DNA from: Auanema rhodensis
Taxonomy: Eukaryota > Animalia > Nematoda
NCBI GenBank assembly: GCA_964057225.1
Contig: OZ059900.1
Span: 26,598,001-26,662,000, forward strand
Length of the DNA: 64,000 nucleotides
Reading direction: 5' to 3'
In this document: one piece after another, positions 12,306 to 63,148 of the stretch
Numbering within the stretch: the first letter of the stretch is position 1
Layout: every line of letters starts with the position of its first letter
Program-made: the position numbers and the translations under genes
The notes under the pieces: model-generated
Databases searched by the model: none
Seen by the model: only the letters and a program-made list of their open reading frames with translations
Told to the model about the DNA's origin: nothing

Positions 12306-12449
12306 TCGTAGTTGTATGAAAGTTTTTTGTTATTGTGGAAATAGAAAGATAACAAGAGTTTTTGTTGTTTGCTCAGTTTGAAATCTTCGTTGTTTTACTT
12401 TTCTTTTCTGTACTGGATACCTAGCTCAACCAACTAAGATTGCAAAAAT

Positions 12450-34537: not shown

Positions 34538-34583
34538 TGCATGTAGATATAGAAATAACTAGCCTAAGCCTGAGCCTAAGCCT
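34538..34583 (+). repeat. Left arm of long-range inverted repeat: 24-bp cap + (GCCTAA)n
   Basis: tgcatgtagatatagaaataacta-gcctaa-gcctga-gcctaa-gcct is the reverse complement of 63071-63116 with 1 mismatch in 46. Confidence 0.9.
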
Positions 34584-34809
34584 TCAGCAGTGGATTCTGT
34601 AGAGTTCTTTCTTATGGTCAAACTAATAAAACAACATTTATTAAAAGTAAATAAAAAGACTGAGTCCGTAAGGAATATCTTCAACAAGAAGCATCATCAA
34701 ACATCAAACACTACATCAAAATTAAAACACACATGCATAACATTTCACAAACGGTTTTTTTAAAAATACAGTGTTAAAAAGGAGTTAAATGTTAATAATA
34801 TTATAAAAA

Positions 34810-35230
34810 CAATTTTCATTGAGTTGAGGCTTAGATATTGATCTTTGAGCTTATGCTTACGCTCGTCCTCCATTTCTGGTAAAGAATCCATCGCCTTGTT
34901 CAAGTTGTCGTGACTTCAAAGGCTAAACAGATAAGGAAACTCCGGATACAGTTCACGTCTCAAAGATCAGTCGTTATACGCACATGTAATACCTTTCACA
35001 CCTCCACTGAATATAAAATTCAAAAGTTTCTTTAAGTTCGGGGTTCATCACCACATAAAGGTAATAATCATTTTTGGAATCAAATTTGATCAAGGGGGGA
35101 CCAAGAGATTCTCTATCGAGGGCATCGGTTACATCTTTCAACTTAATTTTATAAAAAATTTCACTTCTCAACCCCAAGTTGAATAACAGGAACATGCAAA
35201 ACAAAATATCACATATACGTTTCTATGTAA
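34810..35230 (-). pseudogene. Tyrosine recombinase paralog fragment (Box I, catalytic Lys region), in-frame stop
   Basis: CMFLLFNLGLRSEIFYKI...GPPLIKFDSKN...YVVMNPEL, then after a short intron RELYPEFPYLFSL*SHDNLNKAMD. Clearly homologous to 37318-37721, with the same intron position. Confidence 0.8.
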
Positions 35231-35376
35231 TCGTCCGTTGGGGTGACCGCCAGGTAAAGGGGTTTCCGACAGTTCCCAGAAGGGTACACCAAATCAAGAC
35301 CATAAAGCCTAGCTAAAACCGAATGACTATTAATGAAATGGATATTCATGCTCTTGACAGAATTAACATGCAAAAC

Positions 35377-35691
35377 CTATTCATTACAGAAATTTATTAA
35401 ATGAGATACAGCAATTACGTACCCCTCTTTTTCTGTCTCGGGTTCTCCGTATCCCACATCCTGGGAGCTCATCGATACCGTTGGATCCTGTCCGTATCCC
35501 ACATCCTGAAAATAAGAAGGATAACATTTAGAAGCACATGTCATTGTTACCTGTAATAAAAATAATGTTATTTCTATTTCTAAATCATCATCGTCCATTT
35601 CCTTTCTCCCCTCATGGATATTCTCATCATCATCGTCCGTTTCTTCATTCCCCTCATTGATATTTTGTATATATACAATTATACATGCCAT
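35377..35691 (-). CDS. Acidic low-complexity ORF with internal repeats (QDVGYG x2); possibly 5' exons of the minus-strand YR paralog
   Basis: ATG preceded by tttcag, internal splice-like sites, duplicated ccgtatcccacatcctg. Confidence 0.3.
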   Translation of the reverse strand: MACIIVYIQNINEGNEETDDDDENIHEGRKEMDDDDLEIEITLFLLQVTMTCASKCYPSYFQDVGYGQDPTVSMSSQDVGYGEPETEKEGYVIAVSHLINFCNE

Positions 35692-36330
35692 TCTGAAAAA
35701 ATATTAACGTAACAATCAGAAATTCCACTACCGTTCATTGGACCAAATGATTGAGAAAATCAGCACTCTCGAGAATGGGGTTCTGATACTGTGAGAATAG
35801 AACACTCTTCCGTTCTAACAAGGGTGCTGTATATGAGATATGTGAATAAAGGTTTACTTTATCACCACGCGCATGACATGAATCAATTTACTCATACCTT
35901 CCGAAAGGGGGGTCCGGGGGTCACCCCCGGATCTCAAAGCTTATTCATATCGAGAAAACCTACGATATATAGTATCTATAACATGTTTTCAGTACTTTCG
36001 GTATGTACGAGAGAATAATAAGGTATATATTGTTATGTATAAAATATAATATTGTATATCTCAACCTTTCTGGTAGTAATTGAAATATTCTGATTTGAGT
36101 ATCTCTCTTTCATTATAGCATACGATTCCTGAAATGAATGAATTGTGATAATCATACCACAGGTCATACGAGTTTTGATGTACAACATTCTGATAATCAT
36201 ACCACTCTTGAGATGATTTTTTTTATCCTGTAAACTGTATAACGCATTTATGTACTATTTTATGCATTAAAATAGGTACTGTAAAATCTATGAATTTATG
36301 GATTATATTTTAACAAGAATAAAATTCAAG

Positions 36331-38652
36331 GCACTGGTACATATCTGCAGGAGAGATTTGTAGAGAGAGATCAAGCTAGAATTGTTGCTGAAACTGAAGC
36401 TTCCACTGCTCCAACCATGGTTGTTGAAGCTACGGTTGAAGGTCGTGTTCTGACACATTTAGTTAAGTTCCCCTCATTTTTTTAATGTTAAATCAATATA
36501 AAATTTAGAGTGGTGTCACATACAAACGACGTATGGCTCAATGTAAAATTCTTCCGGAGTTGTCGTATATATATATTGTATATCTTTCTGATCACCAATC
36601 ACATGAATATCTCCGATTGCTCCATGAATTAGACGATGGATTCCCCGAAAATCACATGAAGAAACAAATGTACACCGTTGAAGACTACAGAGTTAGTTTA
36701 TTCTTCCTATTTCACTATATAATCCTCCTTTCATAGAGACAAGGACATGCTCGTGTTAAAACATCGAGTTTTATCAGTTTTTCCTCACTCCTGTACTATT
36801 GCATGAGATACAAGAAAATAAAAGATGTTACTTTCGAAGATTTGTTAGAGGTAGTTTATTCAGATAGAGATTTCTATTCCAATACGGCAATACAACTCTA
36901 CCATTGCAGTCGACTTTGAGGTTTATACACGTCGTTGAAAATCTCACAAATTTTACCGAAAGGCATTCAGTACTCCATTTCACTAAAGATTTATCTAGGG
37001 CTTTAAACATTCTGGATTCCACCTTCCTCTCCAACGCTGCATTTATGAGTTTGACTAAAGTCATTAAAAGAATAAGGAAAATTGTTGAACCGGTAATTCA
37101 CCAAGCACTAGTTATCAAAATTCTTCAACTTTGAAGGCCTGAATAAAGAAAAAACTTTATCGAAAATGGCTACCACGCTCCCTACGTTTTATATGCTTTA
37201 TAGGAAATTCCGATGTTTTGCCCATCCTCGTCTCCAGAATTTTATTTCGACCTATGAAGAAACAAGCTCTGAAAACGTAATGCTATTTTTTTCTTAATCT
37301 TGAAGTTTTATTTTCAGGAAAAAAAAATTATGCTCCGAGAAGCGTCCGTCATGCTTTGTATGTTTCTCCTGTACAATTTAGGGCAGCGCAGTGAGATTTT
37401 TTATAAAATCCGCATGGATACCGCTGAAGAAGCTTTGTTTTTGGAATCTAATGATTCCTCTGGTCCTCCTCTCCTGACTTTCAATTCTAAAAATGGTGAC
37501 CCACTTTATGTTGTTGTTAACCCTGAGCTGCTCCCGTACTATCGATTCTATTGGGAAAAGAGGTTAAAGTTACCATAAAGTTAATCTAAGCTTTTCTTCA
37601 GGCGCCTCATGTATCCATCCAACACATATTTATTTTCCAATTCACCTAGTGACAATCTAAATAAAGCGATAGATGCTTTTCCCGCTCTCGACAACATCTT
37701 TAGGAATACCATGAACGTGAGGTAAACGTTAATCACATTTTTCTGTAATGACTTAAAAAACCTCTAAAAAAATTCAGAAGAGCCTATGTGTTTGCTATCG
37801 ACGCATTCAATCCTCAAGATGAGGCCAACCGAAAGCTCTTATCTCAATGTCACGCACTCACACAAGGTCACTCCCTGCAAGTGAGAAATCTCCTCGTATT
37901 TTTCTATAATTTCCTTTATTTTGCAGACTCGCATGAAGCATTACAGCTACTTCACCAAGAAGAGCGCGTATCTGTCATTCTCTCATTCCCTCGATTTAAT
38001 GGACCGTGATCATGAACAGGAGAACATCAGCAGCTTGATGAAAAGAGTTAATAGGAAGAGAAGCTACACCGTAATGACTGATGAGGAAGGGAGTGGTGGT
38101 GAAGACAAGGTGGAGGAGCCGGAAAAAATGACTCTGACCGAGAACTTGCTCGATACTGTGAGGTGCATCATCTGTTTGGAAGTACGAGATAGCATGGAAA
38201 GATCGATACCTTGTGGGCATAGTACTTGCACCACGTGCAGTTATCAGATAATCCAGACCTTCCGGAAGGAAACTCTTCGATGATAAGATGCGCAACAGTA
38301 ACTATATTTATCTTTGAATAACACTATCGTTACATTTCAGTGTCGCGTCAGGTCCGACGGATTCATGATTGACTTCCATCACAATACCCTAGTTTTTTTG
38401 GAAGCTTTGAAAGAGAAGTTTGATTTCGATGTAATTCCCTCTTCTAAAACCCATAATGAATTGATAAATTTTTTCGCTCACCCAATCATTGAAAGACCTC
38501 CCCCCCCACCCACGAATAACCTCTGGCCTCCTTTTATCCGCACTAACCCCTCCCGCCCCCCGTTACAACGTATAGATTCTTTTGATGAAGAAATAGTTAA
38601 CGACTCCCAAGATATAACACTTCCCCCTGAAGTTTATACCATTGACGACTAG
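36331..38652 (+). CDS. Intron-containing tyrosine recombinase with C-terminal C3HC4 RING finger and Pro-rich tail (probably disrupted)
   Basis: Spliced exons 37318-37562, 37602-37721, 37778-37880 and 37927 onward join in frame to give LYNLGQRSEI (Arg-I), SKN (Lys), YLFS, TMNVRRAY (Arg-II), TQGHS (His) and TRMKHY (Tyr), then CIIC..PCGHSTCTTC and CATC. The 5' start is uncertain. Apparent frameshifts near 37137 and 38275. Confidence 0.8.
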
Positions 38653-39351: not shown

Positions 39352-39509
39352 ATATGAGATCTATGACTAAGCATATGACTAAGTCTAAGCATGAGATCTA
39401 TGACTAAGCATATGACTAAGTCTAAGCATGAGATCTATGACTAAGCATATGACTAAGTCTAAGCATGAGATATATGACTAAGCATATGACTAAGTCTAAG
39501 CATAAGATC
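39352..39509. repeat. 37-bp telomere-like minisatellite, left part (~4 units)
   Basis: Unit tgagatctatgactaagcatatgactaagtctaagca. Confidence 0.97.
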
Positions 39510-40442
39510 AGTAGAGAGCCGTGCAAAATTTACTAACCACGCCCCCAAACAGCTGTCAAAAACATACATTTGGGGGCGTCAGCTGCTAAAAACATACTTT
39601 TGGGGCGCGTCAGCTGTCAAAAACATATTTTTGAGCGTCAGCTGTTAAAATCATATTTTGGGATCATGGTTCATGGATTTTCCTTTTTTAAATTTAAAAA
39701 TCATGATTTAAAGCATGATTAAAATTTTTTTTTTTAAATCAAATTTAAATATGCTTTTTCAAATGTACTTTAAAAATCATGATTTATAGCATGATTTTTT
39801 TAAAAATTAAATTTTAAATTTGTTTTTTCAAATGTATGTATATGTTTTTAATTATTTTTAAATATATTAAGTGAAAATAAAAATTATAAATTTTAAATAT
39901 ATAAATTTGTTTTTAAATTTTATTTATTTATTTATTTATTATATTTATTAATAATATTTGTTTACTTTTTGTTTATTTTTTATTGTATTGTGTTTGTACT
40001 TTTTTATTTGTATTTTAAAGAACAATAAAATTTTTGCATGTATATCGTTTTGTTCACCGTACTTGTTATGGGTAATTCAATGGAACACATATCAAAAGTT
40101 AATTCGATAAGAACGATATGAAATACAAAATTTAATGGAACACATATCGAAGATTAATTCGATAAGAACGATATGAAATACCAAAATTTAATGGAACACA
40201 TATCGAAGGTTAATTCGATAAGAACGACATTAAATTATTAATTTTTGAAATTACAAATTGTTATTAATTATATTTATTCTAACAAGTAAAAGTTTCAAAT
40301 TAAAAGAAAAGATTAGTTTTAAACTTTATCTTACTAATATAACAATACAATAACTAAATAGAGTACACATTGAAGGTAAATACAATATATATACAATATA
40401 CAAGATTAACAAACAGTTGCGCTGACCTCAACGCCACGCATA
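39510..40442 (+). repeat. Maverick left TIR (~930 bp)
   Basis: Reverse complement of 54074-55081 from agtagagagccgtgcaaaatttactaaccacg to gttgcgctgacctcaa, with substitutions and indels. Confidence 0.93.
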
Positions 40443-41077
40443 TCGATGGTTAATAAACACTAATAACTGCACTGTGGGGGTTTAAATATAGTATAATCAT
40501 TTTAACATTTCAAATGTTTTAGTTTCGTAATATAATCATTAGTAAATATTCAAGAATGAAATATTTTATTTTGAAATATTCACATATAAAACGTTGGCAG
40601 TCATATGTTTTGTGCTACAATATGGGTGTAAAAGTATACTATAAATAATATATGAGCTATTAAGCAAAGTTTAAAAAGCCTAAATGTTTTACAGAGATGG
40701 CTGTTGTTTATGGCACAAACGGTAAACAATAATGTTTAAAGAGATGTAAAAACTAATTAATATGCAGATTGTTTACAGGTTCAGAGTGCGCCAACTGCTG
40801 GCAACTGTCGACGAGATGAGTATATCTGCATAAATATGCTGTAAAATCTAATTAATAAAAGAATTTCATCAGCAAACTTGATTGTAACACAATGGGTTGT
40901 ACTTTACAAAAATCTTTGTATAAAAGGTTGGCAATTTTGCTACATTTACATTTCAGCTCTGCCAACTATCCGAGGATCCGACGTTTCACCATCTCCTGCC
41001 ACTCTTTGCCAATCGCCATAGACTGCTCCTCTCTGCAAGTTTGCCTTATATTTTAGAAAGTTGGATCTTTAGCGGAA

Positions 41078-41662
41078 ATGAAGCGTGCTGTACTTGCTGA
41101 TGTGACAAATGTTGTGCGCAAATCGCCTGAACCTGAAGTACCACGACCACCCACACCAGCTCCAAATTTCACAAGTTTTGGTATGAACCTTAACTTGTAT
41201 TTTTTAAATCTTTAATTTAGATTCACCAATAAAGCAGATGGAGATTCTGAGAGAGAGCACTCCACCAAGGAGTGTATTAATGAGACCAATTTGTCTCTGC
41301 AAAACTTGTAGGGAATCATTGCAGGTTATAGACGAGTATCACTGTTTCAGCCTCTGTATAAAGTGTAGAGGAAGGAATGATGCGTTGGGTCTTTTGAAGG
41401 AGTTTCGTCACTATAAGCCCGAAAACTTTTCTATTAATGTAAGCTTGCATATTTATTTATTTTCAATTTTATCATTTTTTAGATGCGCTCTTATAACACC
41501 ATGACGTGCAAGCAATTGTTGAACAATATGGGCTATATTGTTATATATGCAGATGAGGCTACTATAAAGACTTTTGGTTATAAGCAGAATGTATTCTACT
41601 TTAAACTAAGTCCAGAAGCACTCAACCTGAACATGTTTATCCGCTTTGATCCTTCATTTTGA
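41078..41662 (+). CDS. Maverick accessory protein, 3 exons (41078-41180, 41221-41438, 41483-41662), 166 aa, N-terminal D-box-like motif and Cys pairs
   Basis: GT-AG introns give an uninterrupted frame MKRAVLADVTNVVRKSPEPEVPRPPTP...DSPIK...STPPR...CLCKTC...CIKC...FDPSF*. Confidence 0.7.
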
Positions 41663-41955
41663 CTACAACAAGCACAAATAGTACAATTGGCGTTTTATTC
41701 TTGTTTTGTTATGTGGCATTTTTATATTCTCAGCCGTAACATTTTTTTTCCAGCACTTGCGAATATCCATCAATGGCTCATCAATTGAGGACGAATGATC
41801 AACCAACTGGTAAGAATTTGAAAATTTGAATAGTCTACACTTTTTTTTTGCAGGTTGAATTGTTGTTTGTATTTTGCTGGTTTTTTATTGTTACATTATG
41901 CGATATATCAAATAAATCATTTATTATAATTACAATTGTTCATAACATTGAAAAG

Positions 41956-43074
41956 TTATACATTTAAATTTTCTGCATCTATCCATTCATTAAAGTTGTC
42001 GGGATATCCACTTCATTTTACAAATACTTGACGTTTACCGCTTCGAGTACGCTCTTTTAAAACTTTTTCTATATAGTACTGGTTGCTTTTATTAGTAGCC
42101 AAGACAAGTTCAGGTTCGTAGAATATTCCCTTTATACGTTCACCATTATAATCTACAAGTTTATACACGGTTGGGTTTCCGGTTACAACCTCATCAATTG
42201 TGAATAGCTCCATTGTATATCCAGACTCGTAGCTTTTTTCAAAAGTACGCCTATTTTTGCTTATGCGAACAGTATCACCAATTTTAAAGCGGCTTTTAAC
42301 AGCTGTTGCATATTCTTCAATGAATATATTTGCTTTAACATCAATGGACCGCATTTTTATGGAGCGGTTATAAGATTTGTTTATTCCTTCAACCAAATCA
42401 TCTAGGATATCAATCCAACGATGATTATTCTTGTAATAGAGATATTTCATCATGCGGGTTTTTAAAGTTCTATTTGCTTGCTCCACCATTGCAGCCTTTT
42501 GTGGTGAACTTGTAGATCCGTGCAGTATGGCAAACTTTTTGAATAGTTTTTCACAATGACTATTATAAAACTCTGTGCCATTATCAGTAATCAACTGAAT
42601 TGGTATAAAATTCTTGAATAAACTTTCAAATGCATTAGCAACCTCTATACCACCTTTAGTTTTCAGAGGCCTAACATATAACATGCGTGTATAAACATCA
42701 ATCATGGTCAACATGTAAGCATAGCCGTCGTTTAATTTTTTATATTTTTGCATATCAACCAAATCTGCTTGCACTGTTAGAAATCGACCACATCCTCTAG
42801 TCTTTCTAGTCTGCATACGCATTCTGGTTGGTTTAAGCCGTGTAAAAGTTTCAGAATCTTGCAAAAAATCATCAACTTGTACCTTTGAAATGCCATGTTT
42901 TCGTGCTTGCGATAATAAATTCTTGGCTGATGTATATGAAGCTGGATGTTTTATAACGTAATAAATGCTCGCCAAAATATCATTTCCATAATCTAATGTA
43001 GAACCTTTTACGACCTTGGCCATTCTGTGAGTCTCCTTCTTGTGGTGTGTAATATGATTCGGCGGCAGTATCAA
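41956..43074 (-). pseudogene. Maverick retroviral-like (rve) integrase with C-terminal chromodomain broken by TGA
   Basis: QADLVDM / ITDNGTEF / MVEQANRTLK DDE triad. Reading through the stop at 42013-42015 gives YYIEKVL...VFVK*SGYPDNFNEWIDAENL, a chromodomain with W replaced by a stop. Confidence 0.92.
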
Positions 43075-43696
43075 AAGTCTTTGACCTTTTACTTTTGAGT
43101 GTACGAACCGGTGATGGTGAATATCGAATAACAGCTTTACGATGACGAGGCGTTCTAGGTAATATAGTAGAGTCCAAGTCTGTAACAGCCGGTTCAGCTC
43201 TAGTTACAACGTCAACTGGATCATTGTCAGCCGACTCTCTTCTAGTTTGTTTCTTGTTAGAACTAGGTACGCCTTTACTGGCTAAAAACTTTGACAAGAC
43301 TGAAAATCCATTGGGCTCCGTTTTTGTTTTATCCAATACAAAATCTAAAATTTTTGTAATATCGGTGTTTGGTACAGCCTCATTATTAATCACAAGTTGA
43401 TTACTCTTGTTTGTGCGCACCTCTGGAAATTTATCCCACAAATTGTTATACTTTCTTGGCAACTTGTATTCGGGCAATAGAGGTGGATCAGCATTTTCCA
43501 CTTGTACTGATATGGGCGCATCTATACTTTCTCTATAGTTTTTGAGACGAGCAATCAAGTCTTCGTATAGTTCAGCCTTTTTATAGTCGGGTATAGCTTT
43601 ATTTTCTCGTAAAAGCTTGAGCTCTGCATCAAACTTGTCTATACTAATTGTTTCCTCGTCGACAGGAATTAGTCGATATTTATGGTTGAGCTTCAT
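42980..43696 (-). CDS. Maverick hypothetical (core-like) protein, 238 aa
   Basis: Open ORF overlapping its neighbours in operon-like fashion; basic C-terminus with QNGQG. Confidence 0.75.
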   Translation of the reverse strand: MKLNHKYRLIPVDEETISIDKFDAELKLLRENKAIPDYKKAELYEDLIARLKNYRESIDAPISVQVENADPPLLPEYKLPRKYNNLWDKFPEVRTNKSNQLVINNEAVPNTDITKILDFVLDKTKTEPNGFSVLSKFLASKGVPSSNKKQTRRESADNDPVDVVTRAEPAVTDLDSTILPRTPRHRKAVIRYSPSPVRTLKSKRSKTFDTAAESYYTPQEGDSQNGQGRKRFYIRLWK

Positions 43697-44001
43697 GATT
43701 TAAAACCAAAATAGGCAATACCACATGTAACTATTGTTTTTAATTGTTTGTGTGAAAGCGTTGCCAATAATGATTTAGCCTTTTCCGGTGTGTGTATCAA
43801 AGCTATTTGACGTAATAATGAAGATATGGGCAAGAGGGTTTTATATTCCTTGTTAGTTAAAAGAAAATTATTATTTTTCACAATATTAAATACAATTTCA
43901 ACAATAGTTTCAATTTGTGCAAAAGAAAATGAGGAAACAGAACAAGGAGTTTTGGCGCAAGAAGACAAAAAGTTGAAATTTGACAAAATACGACCACTCA
44001 T
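43693..44001 (-). CDS. Small conserved Polinton protein, 102 aa
   Basis: The QIETIVEIVFNIVKNN..LT..EYKTL..LLRQIA pattern resembles the small Polinton ORF that follows the ATPase. ATGA overlap with the next gene. Confidence 0.65.
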   Translation of the reverse strand: MSGRILSNFNFLSSCAKTPCSVSSFSFAQIETIVEIVFNIVKNNNFLLTNKEYKTLLPISSLLRQIALIHTPEKAKSLLATLSHKQLKTIVTCGIAYFGFKS

Positions 44002-44013
44002 TGAACAAGCACT

Positions 44014-44659
44014 TTAAACACTAAACACATTTCTGGCAACATAAACAATAGGGTTCTCCGCTGTTATATCAGATAGTATATGCCGCTTCTCACTTGTTAA
44101 AGGATGATTGTCAATCAGTAAATGACTATAGGGAGTAGACATTGCATCATCATACGCCTCTAGAGCATTTTTGAAACGTGGCCCAAATAATTGCTGCAGA
44201 CAATTACGTATTTGTAATATATCTGAATGACTTTTCATCAGTATTATATATGTACTATTGATTCGACTGGTCCTGTCCAGTTGAAATGCCGCTTGCACAA
44301 GATTAAACACTGACCAAATTCCAGTGATGAGCCCATACTGTAAAAATGTTGTTGAGTAATTCTTTTGCTGCTTTATTCGATGAAAAAAAGTTCATCAAAT
44401 CATCCAGCACTAGTATAGTATTTACTCCCTTTTGTTCTTTTATCAAATCAGGATCAGGAGGCCCTTGAATATTTATTAAACGCTCATCATTTATTGGTAC
44501 ACCTGATGACCCACATTGACTGAACCAGAATATTCTATCAATGGGGACGTTGAAAAACTTTTCAGTATTTTCACATATGTGCTTTATGGGGGTTGTTTTA
44601 CCGCATTGGGTAGCACCTATTACAGTTGTCTGACTGGGTAGTTTGAACCTAAAATGCAA
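44014..44659 (-). pseudogene. A32/FtsK-HerA-type packaging ATPase, frameshifted
   Basis: Walker A GATQCGKT and Walker B ILVLDD in the first ORF; LVQ and SRINSTY motifs in the second. Frameshift at ~44310; start also appears damaged. Confidence 0.92.
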
Positions 44660-44705
44660 ATGATTTCATTTGCAATAGTGTACACGTATCAAGTGGTGGT
44701 TTGTC

Positions 44706-45563: not shown

Positions 45564-45568
45564 ACGTT

Positions 45569-46063: not shown

Positions 46064-46286
46064 TCAACCCACTTTTATATAATGAGCAATAATATGACTA
46101 GTGTTGTACAAAAGCCCAATCCCAATGCTATACCTTTAATAAATGGCACTGAAATACATTTCAACATTCTCCTGTATAAAGGCGCTGGTTTAGATTGCTC
46201 CAACGTGTATTTGACACATAATTCACAGTGACAAGGAATATTCATAACTGATCACGTAATGTAGCAGGTTATTAATGACAAATTTC

Positions 46287-47189: not shown

Positions 47190-47246
47190 ACCACAAAACC
47201 TCATAAGCGGTTGTGCATCACTCGGGAGCGGTCGTTTCAGATTTAA

Positions 47247-48581: not shown

Positions 48582-48718
48582 TGTATGTAATAAATTCTTT
48601 AAAAGATTTAAGAATAAAGTTTATTAATACAACTATTTTTAAAAATAAATACATGTACAATAATAAAATTTTATAAATACAAATATATACAAGATAAAAA
48701 TTTATAAATTCAAATATG

Positions 48719-53877: not shown

Positions 53878-54073
53878 TGTACCTTGATATAATGAATACA
53901 TCAGTCTACACATTGCTGTTGGCATTGTAATTTGTTATGTAACATGGATTTGGGTACAGCTGTCAAAACTAGCAGTTGCGATAAACTTTAAAATAAATAA
54001 GCATATTGAATACATCTGTTTTTATTGTCCCCGTCGGATTAATTTTTGTTATTAGTTCTTATTAAATTAACTT

Positions 54074-55081
54074 TATGCGTTTCATTGAGGTCAGCGCAAC
54101 TGTTTGTTAATCCCGTCGTATTTACCTTCAATGTGTGTTCTATAGAGTTTTTGTGGTTATATTAGTAAAATAAAGTTTAAAACTAATCTTTTATTATAAT
54201 TTGAAACCTTTACTTGTTACAATAAATATAATTAATAACAATTCACAATTTCAAAAATTAATAATTTAATGTCGTTCTCATCGAATTAACCTTCGATATG
54301 TGTTCCATTAAATTTTGTATTTCATATCGTTCTTATCGAATCAACCTTCGATATGTGTTCCATTATTTTTTGTATTTCATATGGTTCTTATCGAATTAAC
54401 TTTCGATATGTGTTCCATTGAATTACCCATAACAAGTACGGTGAACAAAATTATCTACATGCAAAAAATTTATTGTTCTTTAAAAATACAAATGAAATAG
54501 TACAAACACAATACAATAAAAAATAAACAAAATAAGTAAACAAACATTATTAATAAATATAATAAAGAAATAAAGAAATAAATAAAATTTAAAAACAAAT
54601 TTATATATTTAAAATTTAAATATAATTTATATATATAAAATTTAAATATAATTTAAATATTTAAAGTTTAAATATAATTTATATATATAAAATTTATTAT
54701 AATTTAAATATTTAAAGTTTAAATATATTTTATATATATAAAATTTAAATATAATTTAAATATTTAAAATTAAGATTTTTATTTTTACTTAATATATTTA
54801 AAAATAATTAAAAATATATACATACATTTGAAAAAACAAATTTAAAATTTGATTTAAAAAAAAAAATTTTAATCATGCTTTAAATCATGACTTTTAAATT
54901 TAAAAAAGGAAAATCCATGAACCATGTTCCCGAAATATGATTTTAACAGCTGACGCTCAAAAATATGTTTTTGACAGCTGACGCGCCCCAAAAGTATATT
55001 TTTAGCAGCTGACGCCCCCAAAAGTATGTTTTTGATAGCTGTTTGGGGGCGTGGTTAGTAAATTTTGCACGGCTCTCTACT
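54074..55081 (-). repeat. Maverick right TIR (~1000 bp)
   Basis: Ends ...aaattttgcacggctctctact. AT-rich internal expansion at ~54600-54780. Confidence 0.93.
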
Positions 55082-58013
55082 GAGATCTATGACTAAGCAT
55101 ATGACTAAGTCTAAGCATGAGATCTATGACTAAGCATATGACTAAGTCTAAGCATGAGATCTATGACTAAGCATATGACTAAGTCTAAGCATGAGATCTA
55201 TGACTAAGCATATGACTAAGTCTAAGCATGAGATCTATGACTAAGCATATGACTAAGTCTAAGCATGAGATCTATGACTAAGCATATGACTAAGTCTAAG
55301 CATGAGATCTATGACTAAGCATATGACTAAGTCTAAGCATGAGATCTATGACTAAGCATATGACTAAGTCTAAGCATGAGATCTATGACTAAGCATATGA
55401 CTAAGTCTAAGCATGAGATCTATGACTAAGCATATGACTAAGTCTAAGCATGAGATCTATGACTAAGCATATGACTAAGTCTAAGCATGAGATCTATGAC
55501 TAAGCCTAAGCCTAAGCCTAAGCCTAAGCCTAAGCCTAAGCCAGAATTTTGAGTAAATTCCTGATCTTGGTTTCATCAGCTCCATCATAAGGTAGCAAAT
55601 TATTTTCTTCGATTTTTTTAGAACTTCTTCAAAACTGGCCGGTGATTGAGCGGGGAAATCGAAATCCATTTTTGAAAAATCGAAGACCTCTATTTCGTTA
55701 TCTTGTTTGATCAAATTCATGTAGGAATCGGTATCCAGAACTTCAAAATTTTTTCTTATACCACACCTTACACAGAATGTGGCGTTCCGTGGAACGAAAA
55801 GTATTTCTAAACACCTTCTCCTCCATAATTCTGACAATGTAAGCAGGCATAATGTATACTGAAAACATAGAAATAACACATATTTTGATTTGAAATTATC
55901 CAAAAAGTTAACTCACTTGAAAATTCAAAAAAATCAAATTGGAACAGTAGCAACACAGCGTGTTAGATGAGAATACCTGAAAAATGTCATTTGATTTTGA
56001 TTCTTAAAATAATAATATGTGAATATTGAAGAAGAAAAAGAAAAATATTGAAAACAAACAAAAAAAGCACAATTAATTAACGAGCTTTTTGAAAAGTCAT
56101 GCACCACAAAAGAGAATTGACCTAAGTCTAAGCATGAGATCTATGACTAAGCATATGACTAAGTCTAAGCATGAGATCTATGACTAAGCATATGACTAAG
56201 TCTAAGCATGAGATCTATGACTAAGCATATGACTAAGTCTAAGCATGAGATCTATGACTAGGCATATGACTAAGTCTAAGCATGAGATCTATGACTAAGC
56301 ATATGACTAATTCTAAGCATGAGATCTATGACTAAGCATATGACTAAGTCTAAGCATGAGATCTATGACTAAGCATATGACTAAGTCTAAGCATGAGATC
56401 TATGACTAAGCATATGACTAAGTCTAAGCATGAGATCTATGACTAAGCATATGACTAAGTCTAAGCATGAGATCTATGACTAAGCATATGACTAAGTCTA
56501 AGCATGAGATCTATGACTAAGCATATGACTAAGTCTAAGCATGAGATCTATGACTAAGCATATGACTAAGTCTAAGCATGAGATCTATGACTAAGCATAT
56601 GACTAAGTCTAAGCATGAGATCTATGACTAAGCCTAAGCCTAAGCCTAAGCCTAAGCCTAAGCCTAAGCCAGAATTTTGAGTAAATTCCTGATCTTGGTT
56701 TCATCAGCTCCATCATAAGGTAGCAAATTATTTTCTTCGATTTTTTTAGAACTTCTTCAAAACTGGCCGGTGATTGAGCGGGGAAATCGAAATCCATTTT
56801 TGAAAAATCGAAGACCTCTATTTCGTTATCTTGTTTGATCAAATTCATGTAGGAATCGGTATCCAGAACTTCAAAATTTTTTCTTATACCACACCTTACA
56901 CAGAATGTGGCGTTCCGTGGAACGAAAAGTATTTCTAAACACCTTCTCCTCCATAATTCTGACAATGTAAGCAGGCATAATGTATACTGAAAACATAGAA
57001 ATAACACATATTTTGATTTGAAATTATCCAAAAAGTTAACTCACTTGAAAATTCAAAAAAATCAAATTGGAACAGTAGCAACACAGCGTGTTAGATGAGA
57101 ATACCTGAAAAATGTCATTTGATTTTGATTCTTAAAATAATAATATGTGAATATTGAAGAAGAAAAAGAAAAATATTGAAAACAAACAAAAAAAGCACAA
57201 TTAATTAACGAGCTTTTTGAAAAGTCATGCACCACAAAAGAGAATTGACCTAAGTCTAAGCATGAGATCTATGACTAAGCATATGACTAAGTCTAAGCAT
57301 GAGATCTATGACTAAGCATATGACTAAGTCTAAGCATGAGATCTATGACTAAGCATATGACTAAGTCTAAGCATGAGATCTATGACTAGGCATATGACTA
57401 AGTCTAAGCATGAGATCTATGACTAAGCATATGACTAATTCTAAGCATGAGATCTATGACTAAGCATATGACTAAGTCTAAGCATGAGATCTATGACTAA
57501 GCATATGACTAAGTCTAAGCATGAGATCTATGACTAAGCATATGACTAAGCATATGACTAATATACGTGCTACAGTTCATTCAACTCAGAATGCACAGTT
57601 TAGTTAAGTGTTTCAGTTGTGATTGAAGCATGACATAAACATGAGATCTATTACTAAGCATATGACTAAGTCTAAGCATGAGATCTATGACTAAGCATAT
57701 GACTAAGTCTAAGAATGAGATCTATGACTAAGCATATGACTAAGCATATGACTAATATACGTGCTACAGTTCATTCAACTCAGAATGCACGGTTTAGTTA
57801 AGTGTTTCAGTTGTGATTGAAGCATGACATAAACATGAGATCTATAACTAAGCATATGACTAAGTCTAAGCATGAGATCTATGACTAAGCATATGACTAA
57901 GCATATGACTTAGTCTAAGCATGAGATCTATGACTATGCCTAAGCCTAAGCATAAGACTAAGCCTAAGCCTAAGCATATGACTAAGCATGAGATCTATGA
58001 CTAAGCCTAAGCC
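55082..58013. repeat. 37-bp telomere-like minisatellite, right part, with pure (TAAGCC)7 tracts and interleaved unique blocks
   Basis: Period 37 (tgagatc at 55118, 55155...). (TAAGCC)7 at 55501-55542 and 56629-56670; mixed telomeric hexamers at 57936-58013. Confidence 0.97.
55501..57550. repeat. 1128-bp tandem duplication (telomere tract + 576-bp unique block + 37-mer array)
   Basis: 55543-56118 matches 56671-57246. Private 37-mer variants at 56261 and 56311 recur at 57389 and 57439. Confidence 0.95.
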
Positions 58014-58299
58014 TTATAAATTTAAATCAAACACCTGTGCAAACCTAGGCTTTTCTTGTTCATTAGTAGTTAGTTATAGTTAGTTAAAAAAAAAGTTACC
58101 TAAAGACGTTTACGATTGGGGGGGGGGTCACTAAAGGCGGCCCTAATTAATGGTCCTATAGAGAAATTAGCGTAGGCGTCATAAAAAAAAATTATCATTG
58201 ATGTTAATATCTTAATTATCTTATTAGCATGTGTTTTATTTTTATTTCATGTTTTTTTCAAGTGTAATGAAAAAAATAAGAAGAATATAATAAAAAGAT

Positions 58300-59363
58300 C
58301 TCAACTCACCAGAAAGAGGGTATTCTGAATGACGAGACGACGCTTTTTCTGCAAAAAAGGGAGGAAGATGTTGCTCTATATAAGATGAAGTGCCGACTGG
58401 CATTTATATCTGCGCCTCATGTTAAACAAGTAAGACTTTATTCATTATAATGTCTGTTTTTTCAGGAAGTAGAAGAGGCCTTGTATCTCCTTGTTAAGTT
58501 ATTCCCGCTAGATTTAGGATTGCCTCCCCCCCTTCCTCTAGATCTGGCTACGTACCACTACGCCACTTTTAAACCCACCGCTCCTGTGACAAAGAAAGGG
58601 GACAAGCTCTCCTCATTCTATAACTTCTTGAAATGTCACATAGCCTGGGGAAAAGAATCAGTTCTTAAGGTGAAGTTATAACATCCTTTTTATATTTTAC
58701 TTTGGATTAGTAGTGTGTGACTTACGAGTCGGATGTAACTGTAAGATTCTTGGATGAATCGTTGTTTATCGGTATGGAAGACATACTCTCAGTTTTCAAG
58801 GAGAACCAGTAAGTTCACCTTTAGCATGATGAGATGACAACCGTTTTCTTAGCGTCACCAAGGAGAAACACAGATTGAAGCTCCTACCATGCTCCCCCAT
58901 TAGTAAGGAAGGATGTATGAAAAAAAAAGCAGAACAGATCCCGGCCAAACTTTCAAGACGTATTCATACGCCAATTTAAAGGGTCGATACAGGTAAGCTA
59001 ATGTTTTGTTCCTTTGATCATGGTTCGTCAGGTCTGGAAAAAACAGCCTAGTGTGCGGAACGACTCGAACAAAAGAAATCATCATGTTCATTCCACGCAA
59101 CTCTATCTAGTAGTGCAGAAGCACATAGATCAACAGTGAGTTCATTTTGTTTGTTAATATATGTAGCTGTTTTTAGTGGTAGCACCTTCTGTCCACCAAT
59201 ACTCCTTGATCCGCTCACGAACGATGACCATTGGGTAGAAAACCTTGCCAAGCTGAGTGCAGCTTTTTACTTCTTCCCGTACTGTTGCTCGATACTTCTC
59301 TACTCAATGGGTAAGACCACTACCTTCTGTGGACGTGGTCATAGTGCAGCTGCCAGTCTCTAA
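58300..59363 (+). CDS. Orphan multi-exon gene of unknown function (model approximate)
   Basis: Series of open exons flanked by gtaag/gtgag donors and ttcag/ttag acceptors, e.g. EVEEALYLLVKLFPLDLG...ESVLK and final exon GSTFCPPILLDP...AAASL*. Confidence 0.45.
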
Positions 59364-59430
59364 CAGCTCCTTATCATTATAAATATTATTATTACAGTTC
59401 ATCACATACCTCATCTTGTGATTTTTCATC

Positions 59431-60425
59431 TCATCTTGTGACCAGATGATTTTTCGGAACCATCAGTCGTTGGCTATAATGAATAAAAACCGCTGACCAA
59501 GTACTGTTATATTTGATTACCTCATCATCAATCAATAGGAGTTTTTTGGACACAACCTTGGACAGATTCTTTGCTGTTTCAAATAACTTACAGTTGCATT
59601 CAGGAGACTTTGCAAAATAAAAGAAAACATCTACAATAAAGAAAAACATACATTTTGGGGAAAGAGGGATCAGGCGAGGTTTTCCCTGCATCTTAATTGT
59701 GCGTCTGCCGATGCAGACGTTGAGGTCGAACCCGCTGAAAAAATCATTAAATAAAATTTAACTTTAATGAAATAATTACCGTGACAACTCTGCTCTGCAA
59801 TAATAACTTCAGTGTCTCCAACCATTTTTCATTGGTTACTGCGATAGGTACCTGAAATGCAAGATAATAACAGATGAAATAAATTAAATACCTTATACTC
59901 GTTGGCATTCTGCTTGTTGAGATGCGTAACTTTTAACACAGCAAACGACTAATGCATCTGCAACATACATGAATGATCACGAAAAGCTTCGTTGAGGCTA
60001 CGACACTGATACACATAAAGTCAAATGTTAGCTAACCTTAACAATGCTGCATCGATCTTCAGTATATATGGAGATTAATTTTGGCAATTAATTGGATACT
60101 CAGATATCTGCTGATAAGCATACCTAGCATTCAACACACGCGTCGAGTCTGCAAAAGATCTTAAAGGGAAGCATACAAACAATTTATAGGTGTAAGGCAT
60201 CTGAAAAATGGAAACGTCAAAGTAAACAATAGTTATTAACTCACGCTTACTGCAGCCGACAAAATCCAGCAATCCAACAGCTTTGTCCACATTCTGAAAA
60301 TTTGCAATGAAAAAGTTAAAGTTAAAAAAAATACCTTTAATATAAGTTGCAGGCTGGTCAGAACATCGGTAGAGCATATTGTGAAAATTGGTCGTTCACG
60401 GCGCTTACGCCCCTTTTTTGCCATC
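59431..60425 (-). CDS. Orphan multi-exon gene or pseudogene starting MAKKGRKRRER (NLS-like)
   Basis: ATG directly after ttcttccag; the first two exons splice in frame; the later frame is not resolved. Confidence 0.4.
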
Positions 60426-60714
60426 TGGAAGAAAAAACTATTAACACAAAACAAAAAAGAAACTGCAAAATGAAACTGCAAAATAAAACACGAATTAATA
60501 TTTAACGCAACGCAAAAAAAAAACGACCGCACCGAAATATAGAGTGAAATATAATGAAATTATCATAACAAATCGATAAAAAATCGATAGCTTTTAGACA
60601 ATTTACAAATTCTGGCGCGTATCGCATGTTATTTTGTAAACATCTGAATATTCAGAGGGGTCATAAAGCTTGACCAGGGGTCATGAAACTAGGTGGGCGC
60701 GCGGCAAAGGGCGC

Positions 60715-61069
60715 AGCTGCATGCAGATAACGCAGTTATTAACCGTTACTACCTTCGAACCAAATTACCAATTTCAGTCAGTTATTATCTTATATAGATT
60801 GCATGCAGATTACGCAGTTATTACCAGTTTCTACTTTCGAACCAAATTACCAATTTCAGTAAGTTATTACCTTTTAGTTTCTACCTTCGAACCAAATTAC
60901 CAATTTCAGTCAGTTATTACCTTATATAGATTGCATGCAGAGTACGCAGTTATTACCAGTTTCTACCTTCGAACCAAATTACCAATTTCAGTAAGTTATT
61001 GCCTTTCAGTTTCTACAAAAAGTTATTACCTTCGAACCAAATTGGTAATTTGGTTCGAAGTTAATAACT
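60715..61069. repeat. Iterated accttcgaaccaaattaccaatttcagt motif (132-bp period) ending in a 23-bp-stem palindrome
   Basis: Motif copies at 60751, 60833, 60883, 60965 and 61028 (last one partial). Hairpin at 61021-61069 with 1 mismatch and a 3-nt loop. Confidence 0.9.
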
Positions 61070-61297
61070 GATAGTTTTTGCCTTTCGTGTTTTGTTGCAG
61101 GCAATAACTGTTAACATGAAATTAGAATAATTTTTTTTTCTTTCTTATTTTTATTTAATTAATTTGCATCTTCTTTGTTATTATTTCATTTGCATCTTCT
61201 TATTTTATTCGCATCAATTCGCATCATCACTTCTTCATATAACTTTTTAATTTGCTTTATTCTATTTCTAATGTTGATTTATTTGCAGATCTCTAAT

Positions 61298-62706
61298 ATG
61301 TTTACTGTTTCATACGATAAGTATATTTCGACAATCCCTACCAGGGATTGTCTTCCGTTTGTGTACGACTGCCTGGCGGAGAACGATTACTGCGAGATGT
61401 GCAGAAATAAGGCAGGGGAGTGTGTGTTTTTCTATGTATATAGAGCATACATTGAGAAGGGGATTTGTAAGTTTTTTTTTCCTTTTAATTTTTTTAATTA
61501 TATCATTGTAGGTTGGGCATGTTTGGTGCCACGTTGCAGGGATTTAAACCACACAGATTTTGTGGATGATGCAGCTCTTCTTCATTGGAATAGAGCACGA
61601 TCGCAGATGTGTGGAAAGGGTGGATTGCAGATGATTCATGCAGCAGCCGCAGGAGGACAAGTAGTAGCAGATAGGCAGTAAGTTATTCTAATATTCTTCA
61701 TTTTTAAAATTTTTTTATCTTCAGGCAGGATCGGTTGGAATTTGGTGGGAGACAGCAGTTTAACAACGCAGATGCAGGTAGAAGGTAAGTGTTATTATTG
61801 ATAAAGATTTTAAAATTTACATTTTTTTAAGGAGCATTTCTCCTCCCAGTTGGGCTCATGAGGTTGTCAGCAGCCATCCGAATGAAAAGAAGAGTGAAAA
61901 TATGCAGCTGGAGTTGGAACTGAATAGCAGGCTCGGGAGATTCGTAAGTTATAATTATTCTTCATTAGTTTATTCTTTTTATAGAGTATGGCGGATTTAA
62001 ACTCCTTAGTAGGAACCGTAAAACGGTTGCGGGAGAATTTCCCGTCATGGGCCTCTTTTCTCATATCGCAGATAACACCTGGCTTCGGCCGTTTTAGAAG
62101 CAGAATCCGGGAAATGGACCATAGCATCGCAGGGCTGGGAAAAAGCTTAGATTGCATGTTGCAGCACATGTACTGTGATAGTTGCGGGTGGTTCAACAGT
62201 AGGGAGGTTAGTTCAAATTCCCTTTTTTTAATACAATTTTTTTTAGGAAAATAAGGTTTATTGCCACTTCATCAAAATGGAAATAAAGCCTTTCATATTT
62301 GGTGAATGTGAGTTAGATGACTGTTTATTTTTTTATTTATTTTCTTTTTTCAGGCACGGTCTGCTCTCAATGGAAATGCAGTGACGTAGCATGCATTTCC
62401 TTCATGTTGCAGCGCAGCCACGAGCGGCATAAGGCATTGTGGCATGCCTTCATGTCCGCCCGGCAGGACGAGGACTATGAGGAGGAGGAGCAGAGGAAGA
62501 AGAAGCAGGAGGAGGAGGAGCAGAAGAAGAAGCAGGAGGAGGAGGAACAGCAGGCCAGGAAGAAGAAGCAGGAGGAGCGGGCAATACGGGCCGCTAAGGT
62601 GCAAGCCTTAAAGGAAAGAAGAGAGAAGGCAAAACGAGAGCTGATGAAGGTGGGGGGAAGAGGAGCTCCTGATACTGAGCCTGGAGACAATGGATCGCGT
62701 GGATGA
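61298..62706 (+). CDS. Orphan Cys-rich multi-exon gene(s) ending in an E/K/Q coiled-coil repeat
   Basis: Exons with CEMC, CLVPRC, CDSC and CSQWKC, then (EEEEQ-KKKQ)x3; splice signals between them. May be one or two genes. Confidence 0.5.
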
Positions 62707-63053
62707 AGAGGTCGCAGCAGAAATCGGAGCAGCATTGCAGCAGAATTAATTTTTTTTGTTATACTTTTTGTACATATTTGTTTTTTTATACGCCTTAATA
62801 ACTGTTATACCTATACCAATCATTTATTAACTGTTATGTTATTCTATATCAGAAAAAAGTGACAAGGAAATCAAGGATGAAATCACATTAGTTATTAACT
62901 GACGTACAATTATGGTGGTGCGAGCACAGACGGTTCGGGAACTCAATTGACAATTAAATATGATTTTCTGGGTAATTCGATGCTGTAGATGTCAAAAAGT
63001 TGATCGGTTTCACTAGAGGACGTCAGGAAATACCTGTACAATTATTGTGGTGC

Positions 63054-63116
63054 GGCTAAGGCTTAGGCTTAGGCTTAGGCTTAGGCTTAGGCTAGTTATT
63101 TCTATATCTACATGCA
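63054..63116 (+). repeat. Right arm of long-range inverted repeat: (TTAGGC)n + 24-bp cap
   Basis: ggctaaggc(ttaggc)5 tagttatttctatatctacatgca. Confidence 0.9.
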
Positions 63117-63148
63117 GGGGCTGCCGCCCCCGCGCCCCCGCTTATTTT

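What the first reader, a model, noticed from the sequence alone, without database searches (positions are those of the whole stretch)
34538..63116. Candidate new large mobile element: telomere-repeat-capped inverted ends plus a tyrosine recombinase, hosting a nested Maverick
Seen: the same 24-bp cap (TGCATGTAGATATAGAAATAACTA) followed inward by GCCTAA repeats lies at 34538 and, inverted, ends at 63116 (45/46 match). Both tracts finish inward with a GCCTT(C)AGC variant. The hexamers are oriented as on a real linear chromosome (C-strand at the left end, TTAGGC at the right). The outer TGCA is palindromic, so the ends can also be read as TGTAG...CTACA flanked by a 4-bp TGCA direct repeat. Inside are a YR-RING gene, a YR paralog, telomere-derived arrays, an iteron/hairpin block and at least 3 orphan genes, about 13 kb once the Maverick is subtracted. 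Established: ciliate TBE elements carry telomeric repeats in their TIRs and Tec elements encode a YR; Cryptons encode intron-containing YRs but lack such TIRs. Inference: this may be a YR-mobilised, telomere-bearing cargo element or integrated linear episome. I do not know this combination from nematodes.
Basis: partly seen in the sequence, partly recalled or inferred. Interest (0 to 1): 0.88.

Follow-up and report, generated by a model that had tools for sequence, protein, structure and literature searches.

The report
Telomere-repeat-ended DNA block in a nematode
A 28.6-kb stretch of what is probably nematode DNA has sharp ends: identical 24-base inverted caps, each followed inward by host telomere repeats. 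It carries a rare recombinase-like/RING gene and a later Maverick insertion, so it may be a new kind of large mobile element, but only one copy could be examined and mobility is unproven.

Summary
The same 24-bp cap lies at 34538-34561 (+) and 63093-63116 (-). Each cap is followed inward by GCCTAA/TTAGGC hexamers with chromosome-end polarity. Similarity stops sharply on both sides.

The nested Maverick is real: 39510-55081, about 0.9-kb inverted ends, a 6-bp target duplication inside a 37-bp minisatellite, and integrase, protein-primed polymerase and protease-like genes. It is a secondary insertion.

The remaining 13.0 kb holds:
- one conserved gene of about 8 exons, with a RING finger and an upstream domain whose motifs and spacing resemble a tyrosine recombinase (YR);
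- a two-exon broken fragment of the same gene;
- telomere-derived arrays in 1128-bp periods;
- an iteron/hairpin block;
- ORF-rich arms with no homologues.

No profile, solved-structure or fold search confirmed the YR call, so it rests on motifs only. The gene family has relatives in only two public sequencing runs. No second copy of the ends, no empty site and no target duplication could be found. Mobility is therefore untested.

Rivals are a pair of dispersed short repeats, a signal of programmed DNA elimination, or a captured telomere-ended fragment.

Verdict: a real, unusual, bounded unit. The "YR-mobilised telomere-bearing element" reading is plausible but only partly supported.

The parts
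34538..34561 (+). Left 24-bp cap (outer end of the inverted repeat)
   Evidence: Exact match to the reverse complement of 63093-63116; 0 expected by chance; I15
34562..34588 (+). Left telomere-like tract, C-strand polarity, about 4 hexamers ending in a GCCTT-type variant
34763..35222 (-). Fragment of the YR-like gene family (two exons only; broken by one in-frame stop; no RING and no C-terminal catalytic-like part)
   Evidence: tblastx to gene A, 50-55% identity over about 107 aa; aligned in A1
36533..38283 (+). Gene A: YR-like domain plus C3HC4 RING, about 8 exons. The RING of this copy matches only the first three quarters of the Pfam model, and the frame ends before the last Cys pair.
   Evidence: Colinear at 35-56% aa identity with L001 and L003; one shared intron position, and one window intron confirmed by a continuous ORF in L003; RING Pfam E=8.7e-5, full RING in the relative
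38302..38652 (+). Open frame of 116 codons just downstream of gene A; unknown whether it belongs to gene A
   Evidence: no Pfam hit; no match in L003
38930..39353 (.). Cluster of about 22-bp motifs containing TGTAGAG, in both orientations; one more copy at 34598 next to the left telomere tract
   Evidence: 6 exact 9-mers against 0.38 expected
39354..39509 (+). 37-bp telomere-derived minisatellite, the part left of the Maverick
39510..55081 (.). Nested Maverick/Polinton-type element (15,572 bp), flanked by a 6-bp duplication at 39504-39509 / 55082-55087 (5 of 6 identical)
   Evidence: Inverted ends of about 0.9 kb, 93-96% alike (I1-I7, I22); junctions; hallmark genes
42013..43074 (-). Maverick integrase (rve core)
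   Evidence: Pfam PF00665 E=7e-9
46287..46829 (-). Maverick adenovirus-type protease-like ORF (weak, below the Pfam cut-off)
   Evidence: Pfam PF00770 E=1.5e-3
49327..51535 (-). Maverick protein-primed B-family DNA polymerase; not one continuous frame (at least one interruption, nature unresolved)
   Evidence: Pfam PF03175 in two separate ORFs, E=8.9e-23 and 2.9e-15
55082..58016 (+). Continuation of the 37-bp array, then a 1128-bp period repeated about 2.5 times: 37-bp array, perfect (GCCTAA)6.5 at 55503-55542 and 56631-56670, and a 579-bp unique block with a 140-codon ORF on the minus strand. A degenerate third array follows.
58017..63053 (.). Right arm: ORF-rich, no homologues, no Pfam domains
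   Evidence: 9 open segments of at least 100 codons against 0.95 expected
60718..61084 (+). Iteron block: five copies of a 30-bp unit, three copies of a 26-bp unit, closed by an inverted copy that forms a hairpin with a stem of about 22 bp
   Evidence: DNA fold -20.8 kcal/mol, z = -8.9
62904..63054 (+). Two direct copies of a 19-bp subterminal motif (62904-62922 and 63036-63054), found at the right end only
   Evidence: 2 matches against 0.04 expected
63054..63092 (+). Right telomere tract, G-strand polarity, about 6.5 hexamers
63093..63116 (-). Right 24-bp cap

Best explanation
Region 34538-63116 is one inserted DNA unit whose two ends are homologous. Each end is a 24-bp unique cap plus a short tract of host telomere hexamers plus a shared variant hexamer. 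It is most likely an old, partly decayed copy of a large DNA element that carries its own recombinase-like gene (gene A, a YR-like domain fused to a RING finger).

Shown: the sharp inverted ends; the absence of any DDE, Rep or helicase domain; conservation of gene A, with a shared intron position, in another organism; the secondary nature of the Maverick.

Inferred: joining the two ends would give a perfect palindrome centred on TGCA, with two 20-bp arms. That is the layout of a site for a tyrosine-type recombinase. Such a recombinase could insert the unit at a TGCA without a target duplication. The subterminal telomere repeats would be part of the end structure. They could be binding sites, or seeds that let host telomere factors cap a free linear form.
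For: - The ends are exact and cannot be chance. The hexamer tracts differ in number but share the same inner variant, which argues for common descent of the two ends.
- The flanks are unrelated, non-coding and repeat-rich, while both arms are enriched in long open frames.
- RING is the only domain found by Pfam in 90 open segments; no other transposase type appears.
- Gene A is colinear at 35-56% aa identity with contigs from two sequencing runs, with one shared intron position. It has invariant residues in the order R, K, R, H, Y. The spacings are about 32, 73, 31 and 9 residues, counted on the relative P0005/L003. From my own knowledge of tyrosine recombinases, this is close to their catalytic set, except that the first His is replaced and one spacing is about 8 residues longer.
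- The secondary-structure order helix, R, helix, hairpin with K, helix agrees with that fold, although both models have low confidence.
- A survey of nematode genomes found no Crypton, so such an element would not have been catalogued (PMC4157794).
Against: - Only one copy is known. No empty site, no second pair of ends and no relative long enough to show ends were found.
- No target duplication is demonstrable.
- No recombinase hit came from any profile library or from PDB sequences on any piece, and the structure models were unusable.
- The RING of the window copy is incomplete and the second copy is a broken fragment, so this copy may be inactive.
- Beyond the hexamers the two ends share nothing, and the subterminal motifs differ between the ends.
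Confidence: 0.4

Rival explanations
1. Two independent copies of a short dispersed repeat (cap plus interstitial telomere hexamers, for example the tip of a MITE, a Helitron-like element or another family) happen to lie in opposite orientation 28.5 kb apart. The DNA between them is ordinary repeat-rich, gene-poor chromosome, and gene A is an unrelated resident gene.
For: The homology between the ends is only 46 nt and nothing further inward is shared. Interstitial telomere tracts are very common in nematode genomes: 1,229 in C. elegans according to PMC9071541. The window is a repeat-rich region with satellites, an LTR element and a Maverick.
Against: The motif occurs exactly twice in 64 kb, both times complete, facing inward and 24/24 identical. 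Each copy sits exactly where the character of the DNA changes. Neither copy has a partner end of its own nearby. All other telomere tracts in the window lack the cap.
Confidence: 0.2
2. The caps are cis-signals of programmed DNA elimination, like the 'sequences for elimination' of rhabditid nematodes. The block is then defined by developmental breakage and telomere healing rather than by transposition. A break between cap and hexamers would release the interior with telomeric 3' ends already in place.
For: Programmed elimination with short conserved motifs at precise telomere-addition sites is described in Oscheius, Auanema, Mesorhabditis and three early-branching Caenorhabditis species. In one species the motif is 24 bp long and lies 27-34 bp from the addition site. 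Eliminated DNA there is rich in 150-160-bp satellites, and germline telomeres show periodic ALT-like patterns (PMC13370393; PMC13060919; 10.64898/2026.08.27.747507). The window has a 31-kb 168-bp satellite, 24-bp caps, a 27-bp tract on the left, and periodic telomere-derived arrays.
Against: In the published Caenorhabditis geometry the motif lies in retained DNA and the new telomere is added downstream of it. With the flanks retained, the window's germline hexamers have the wrong polarity. With the interior retained, the caps lie on the wrong side. The caps are not palindromic like the Oscheius/Auanema motif. The motif letters are not given in the papers' text and no supplements are held, so identity could not be tested. 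The species of the window is unknown.
Confidence: 0.13
3. A non-autonomous cut-and-paste element moved by a transposase encoded elsewhere in the genome. Gene A and the other ORFs are cargo or captured host genes.
For: Terminal inverted repeats are present and no transposase domain is inside. The RING of gene A in this copy is incomplete.
Against: No target duplication of any length from 2 to 12 bp lies outside the repeat. Thirteen kb of unique cargo is unusual for a non-autonomous element. The second, inverted fragment of gene A next to the left end suggests that the gene belongs to the unit.
Confidence: 0.12
4. A telomere-ended linear DNA fragment was captured at a break in the centre of a pre-existing 48-bp palindrome. 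The fragment could be a piece of an old chromosome end with ALT/TALT-like arrays. The event was a single one, not a mobile family. Alternatively, the structure is an assembly artefact that joined telomere-bearing reads.
For: Without the interior, the two caps would form a perfect palindrome. The hexamers have chromosome-end polarity. The interior holds tandem units of array plus perfect telomere tract plus unique block, like templates for alternative telomere lengthening.
Against: It needs a special target and the joining of telomeric ends. The shared inner variant hexamer at both ends is not expected from two independent telomeres. Tracts of 4-6 hexamers are not what collapsed kilobase telomeres would give in an assembly.
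Confidence: 0.1

Closest known systems
Crypton (eukaryotic DNA transposons that encode only a tyrosine recombinase)
   Same: An intron-containing gene with a YR-like motif set is the only candidate enzyme. Nothing demonstrates a real target duplication. A short identical sequence (TGCA) lies at both junctions, as expected from site-specific recombination.
   Different: Cryptons have no terminal inverted repeats and are a few kb long. Here there is a 46-nt inverted end with telomere repeats, 13 kb of content and a RING fusion. No profile recognises the protein as a recombinase. A survey found no Crypton in nematodes (PMC4157794).
Ciliate telomere-bearing elements (Oxytricha TBE1, Tetrahymena Tel-1) and Euplotes Tec elements; comparison from my own knowledge
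   Same: Host telomere repeats are built into inverted ends with chromosome-end polarity. Tec elements also encode a tyrosine recombinase.
   Different: In the ciliate elements the telomere repeats are at the very tips, whereas here a 24-bp cap lies outside them. The ciliate elements encode DDE transposases and make 2-3-bp target duplications; none was found here. The host here is an animal.
Starships (giant cargo-carrying fungal elements with a 'Captain' tyrosine recombinase)
   Same: A large unit has a recombinase-like gene near one end, short end repeats and orphan cargo, and it hosts other transposons (PMC9156397 and PMC13004909, listed).
   Different: No DUF3435 match. Starships are fungal, are usually much larger, and have no telomere repeats in their ends.
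Sequences for elimination (SFE) of rhabditid nematodes
   Same: A short conserved motif (24 bp in one species) lies beside a telomere-related junction, in pairs of opposite orientation around a block, in satellite-rich DNA (PMC13370393).
   Different: Germline telomere hexamers with this polarity next to the motif are not described. The position of the motif relative to retained DNA does not fit. Motif identity could not be tested.
Maverick/Polinton (for the nested element only)
   Same: Inverted ends of about 0.9 kb, a 6-bp target duplication, protein-primed polymerase, retroviral-type integrase and an adenovirus-type protease-like ORF.
   Different: Nothing unusual was seen. Capsid and ATPase genes were not recognised by Pfam, and the polymerase is not one continuous frame.

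Membership tests
Tyrosine recombinase superfamily (gene A protein) | Significant match to a recombinase/integrase profile or solved structure | tested here: not met
   No hit in Pfam, NCBIfam, PHROGs or PDB sequences, for single exons, for longer pieces of the relative, or for small profiles
Tyrosine recombinase superfamily (gene A protein) | Catalytic residues R, K, H-x-x-R, H/W, Y in order with the usual spacing | tested here: inconclusive
   Invariant R, K, R, H and Y in order, spaced about 32/73/31/9 residues in the relative. The first His is replaced, one spacing is about 8 residues longer than I recall for the family, and only 3-5 sequences are available.
Tyrosine recombinase superfamily (gene A protein) | Catalytic-domain fold | tested here: inconclusive
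   AlphaFold2 on exon-sized pieces gave pLDDT 54 and 43.5, and Foldseek returned nothing meaningful. The whole spliced protein was not modelled because the joined step was left out.
Crypton | No terminal inverted repeats | tested here: not met
   46-nt inverted ends
Crypton | Several dispersed copies with different flanks | not testable with these tools
   The source genome is not in any searchable collection
Ciliate TBE/Tel-1-type telomere-bearing transposons | Telomere repeats at the extreme tips of the inverted repeats | tested here: not met
   A 24-bp non-telomeric cap lies outside the hexamers
Ciliate TBE/Tec elements | DDE transposase gene and short target duplication | tested here: not met
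   No DDE domain in 90 open segments; no duplication outside the repeat
Starship | DUF3435 'Captain' recombinase as first gene | tested here: not met
   No DUF3435 match at E up to 10 on any piece
Cut-and-paste TIR transposon | Terminal inverted repeats plus a target-site duplication of fixed length | tested here: inconclusive
   Inverted repeats are present. The only 'duplication' (TGCA or CATG) is produced by the palindromic end itself.
Programmed-elimination signal (SFE) | Match to the species' motif, and telomere-addition reads and a depth change at the site | not testable with these tools
   The motif letters are not in the papers' text, no supplements are held, there are no read data, and the species is unknown
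Maverick/Polinton (nested element) | Long inverted ends and a 5-6-bp target duplication | tested here: met
Maverick/Polinton (nested element) | Protein-primed B-family polymerase and rve integrase | tested here: met
   PF03175 E=8.9e-23 and 2.9e-15; PF00665 E=7e-9
Maverick/Polinton (nested element) | Capsid proteins, packaging ATPase, maturation protease | tested here: inconclusive
   Only a weak protease match, E=1.5e-3, below the cut-off. The other ORFs have no Pfam hit. Relatives were not fetched (see referred steps).

The most novel reading that the evidence does not exclude
The unit is, or was, an integrating element of nematodes with a free linear form. A recombinase or resolvase-like enzzyme of the tyrosine type, fused to a RING finger, would cut at the cap/hexamer borders or recombine the palindromic cap-cap junction. 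The built-in telomere hexamers would then let the host's own telomere machinery cap and maintain the released molecule. This mechanism might be related to the still unidentified machinery of programmed DNA elimination in rhabditid nematodes.
Probability: 0.08. Interest if true: 0.92.

Novelty: new variant of a known kind. Interest (0 to 1): 0.6.

Why it matters
DNA elements that move with a tyrosine recombinase are rare in animals, and a survey reported none in nematodes (PMC4157794). Telomere repeats built into transposon ends are known essentially from ciliates.

A bounded nematode unit that combines both features, and carries a gene family absent from annotated databases, would add a new type to the list of large cargo-carrying eukaryotic elements. 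It would also give a concrete sequence with which to ask how interstitial telomere tracts arise.

If the caps instead turn out to be elimination signals, the locus would be an unusual case in which the germline already carries telomere seeds at the break points. Either way, the claim can be settled by a simple census of one 24-bp motif in the source genome.

Tried and rejected
Searches for relatives and other copies
- Relatives of gene A: phmmer against 1.84 billion representatives gave two true hits. Two other hits are long repeat proteins whose scores are summed over 6-9 repeated stretches, and I treat them as spurious. Word-indexed searches with the exon and with a profile added nothing.
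- Contigs of the relatives are 0.9-1.7 kb and show no ends and no telomere hexamers.
- The cap pattern and the gene A profile found nothing in JGI metagenomes.
- Exact look-ups of two window ORFs: not on record.
- The 172-codon ORF of the right arm has no homologue.
- The run accessions are not mentioned in any held paper.

Tests of the recombinase call
- Pfam, NCBIfam, PHROGs and PDB sequence searches gave no hit, and two AlphaFold2 runs plus one Foldseek search were negative or unusable.

Other checks
- No Rfam family or tRNA gene in the unit.
- The idea that the internal iterons are cap copies is rejected: 7 mismatches in 24 is at chance level, and only the first 12 nt are alike.
- The idea that the cap is related to the Maverick ends is rejected: the shared 12-mer does not extend.
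- The bacterial promoter/terminator scan is uninformative here.

Full report
1. THE OBSERVATION

The 24-bp cap occurs twice in the 64-kb window at up to three mismatches: at 34538-34561 on the plus strand and at 63093-63116 on the minus strand. No match is expected in shuffled sequence. The repeat finder reports a 46-nt inverted pair at 98% (I15).

Reading the ends directly:
- The left cap is followed by about four GCCTAA-type hexamers (34562-34588).
- The right cap is preceded by about 6.5 TTAGGC hexamers (63054-63092).
- Relative to the interior, the polarity is that of the two ends of a linear chromosome.
- Both tracts end inward with a GCCTT-type variant unit. Together with the different unit numbers, this suggests one ancestral end that later changed by slippage.

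An alignment of the two ends shows no similarity beyond the hexamers and none outside the caps. The flanks match neither each other nor the interior. Telomere hexamers occur nowhere else in the window except inside the unit.

A systematic test of target duplications at every possible boundary offset finds only the 4-bp repeats (TGCA, CATG) that the palindromic end itself generates. A duplication therefore cannot be claimed.

2. THE SURROUNDINGS

- Bases 1-31754 are a 168-bp satellite of about 188 copies.
- The satellite is interrupted at 12048-17603 by an LTR retroelement with identical 247-bp LTRs and one open 1551-codon Gag-Pol-type frame.
- The left flank 31755-34537 is AT-rich and has no long open frames.
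- The right flank begins with a GC-rich 27-mer, followed by 3.9 copies of a 135-bp repeat.
- The telomere unit TTAGGC points to a nematode. This is an inference; the species is unknown.

3. THE NESTED MAVERICK

- Inverted ends of about 0.9 kb, 93-96% alike, lie at 39510-40442 and 54074-55081.
- The element sits inside a 37-bp minisatellite that continues in register on both sides. It is flanked by a 6-bp duplication, identical at five of six positions.
- Pfam finds an rve integrase (E=7e-9), a protein-primed B-family polymerase in two separate ORFs (E=8.9e-23 and 2.9e-15) and a weak adenovirus-type protease match.
- The polymerase is thus not one continuous frame. There is at least one interruption, and I did not resolve its nature.
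- The divergence between the two ends indicates an old insertion, so the host structure is older still.
- I fetched no Maverick relatives (see referred steps).

4. THE 13.0 KB THAT REMAIN

Left arm
- Gene A (36533-38283, plus strand, about eight exons).
- An inverted two-exon fragment of the same family next to the left end (34763-35222), with one in-frame stop.
- A cluster of about 22-bp motifs containing TGTAGAG at 38930-39353, with one more copy right after the left telomere tract.

Middle
- The 37-bp telomere-derived array runs into a 1128-bp period repeated about 2.5 times.
- Each period consists of the array, a perfect (GCCTAA)6.5 tract and a 579-bp unique block.
- This resembles templates for alternative telomere lengthening and the periodic germline telomere arrays described in one Caenorhabditis species (PMC9071541; PMC13370393).

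Right arm (58017-63053)
- An iteron block closed by a strong hairpin (z = -8.9).
- Two direct 19-bp subterminal motifs.
- Several long ORFs.

Both arms have many more open segments of at least 100 codons than shuffled sequence: 6 and 9, against about 0.9 expected. The left flank has none. No ORF other than the RING exon has a Pfam domain. No DDE, Rep or helicase domain is present. The longest right-arm ORF has no homologue.

5. GENE A

Rarity. The best-conserved exon was scored against 1.84 billion representative proteins and found only two real relatives, both exon-sized fragments from one sequencing run. A third fragment comes from a second run.

Conservation. Their contigs (L001, L003; L002 is part of L003) are colinear with gene A from 36581 to 38253 at 35-56% amino-acid identity. 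One intron position is shared. A second window intron (37882-37926) is confirmed by a continuous frame in L003.

RING. The relative has a complete C3HC4 RING (Pfam E=5e-5). The window copy matches only the first three quarters of the model, and its frame ends before the last Cys pair. It may therefore be damaged at its C-terminus.

Upstream domain. Invariant residues lie in this order:
- an R in a hydrophobic LG.R.EI context;
- a K in an SKN turn between two predicted strands;
- an RR[AS]YV motif;
- a GHS motif;
- a Y nine residues later.

From my own knowledge this order and spacing is close to the catalytic set of tyrosine recombinases and type IB topoisomerases. The first His is replaced and one interval is longer.

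Against this, no recombinase family or solved structure is hit by any piece or small profile. The two AlphaFold2 models have pLDDT 54 and 43.5, and Foldseek returns nothing meaningful.

The whole protein has therefore not been tested. I put the chance that the domain is a tyrosine-type recombinase at about one half.

6. MECHANISM

The best reading is a single inserted unit with homologous ends. It is probably an old and partly decayed copy of a large DNA element with its own recombinase-like gene. Joining the two ends would give a perfect palindrome with two 20-bp arms around TGCA. That is the layout of a core site for a tyrosine-type recombinase, and it would explain insertion without a target duplication. 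The subterminal telomere hexamers may serve as binding sites or as seeds for capping a free linear form. All of this is inference. Nothing here shows movement.

7. RIVALS

(a) Two solo copies of a dispersed cap-plus-hexamer repeat. This is not excluded without the genome. It is disfavoured because there are exactly two complete, identical, inward-facing copies, and they lie where the character of the DNA changes.

(b) Signals of programmed DNA elimination. Rhabditid nematodes, including three early-branching Caenorhabditis species, break chromosomes at precise sites next to short conserved motifs. In one species the motif is 24 bp long and lies 27-34 bp from the addition site. The eliminated DNA is rich in 150-160-bp satellites (PMC13370393; PMC13060919; 10.64898/2026.08.27.747507). 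The resemblance in numbers and context is striking. But the polarity of the germline hexamers and the side on which the caps lie do not fit the published geometry, and the motif letters could not be compared.

(c) A non-autonomous cut-and-paste element.

(d) A captured telomere-ended fragment inserted into a palindrome, or an assembly artefact.

8. COMPARISON WITH KNOWN FAMILIES

| Family | What does not fit |
|---|---|
| Crypton | The unit has inverted ends |
| Ciliate TBE/Tel-1/Tec type | The cap lies outside the repeats; no DDE transposase; no duplication |
| Starship | No DUF3435 match |

The unit works most like a tyrosine-recombinase DNA element with the end architecture of ciliate telomere-bearing transposons. 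No nematode element of this kind is described in the papers I could search.

9. VERDICT

The unit is a real and unusual bounded structure. The recombinase assignment and the mobility remain unproven.
- Interest: 0.6.
- Novelty: a new variant of a known kind, if the best reading holds.

Noticed in passing
window 1-31754: 168-bp satellite of about 188 copies (77% matches overall). The parts left and right of the LTR insertion differ slightly in composition (GC 0.295 against 0.28).
   Followed up: partly
window 12048-17603: LTR retroelement inserted in the satellite. It has two identical 247-bp LTRs and one open 1551-codon frame with protease, reverse transcriptase, RNase H and integrase domains. 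The identical LTRs suggest a very young insertion.
   Followed up: partly
window 63117-63670: A GC-rich 27-mer lies directly outside the right cap, followed by 3.9 copies of a 135-bp repeat (97% alike).
   Followed up: no
window 32635-32745 and 33424-33531: An approximately 110-bp direct duplication, 789 bp apart, in the left flank (about 91% identity).
   Followed up: no
window 54452-54463 (and the diverged counterpart near 40035): The first 12 bases of the cap also occur in the inverted ends of the Maverick. The match does not extend, so I take it for chance.
   Followed up: yes
window 38639-38682: A perfect 22-bp tandem duplication spans the stop of the 116-codon ORF downstream of gene A.
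   Followed up: no
window 55484-55903 and 56612-57031 (minus strand): Identical 140-codon ORFs lie in the two copies of the 579-bp unique block. Each reads into the telomere tract at its end. There is no Pfam hit, and it is doubtful that they are genes.
   Followed up: partly
L001, L002, L003 (Logan runs ERR11476990 and ERR11477541): These are the only relatives of gene A found in public data. They are short contigs of an unidentified organism. L002 is identical to part of L003, so both runs probably sample the same species. In this relative the RING is complete.
   Followed up: partly
window 62317-62703: An ORF with a long Glu/Lys-rich low-complexity stretch produces overlapping open frames on both strands. 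It lies in the most GC-rich part of the unit (43%).
   Followed up: no
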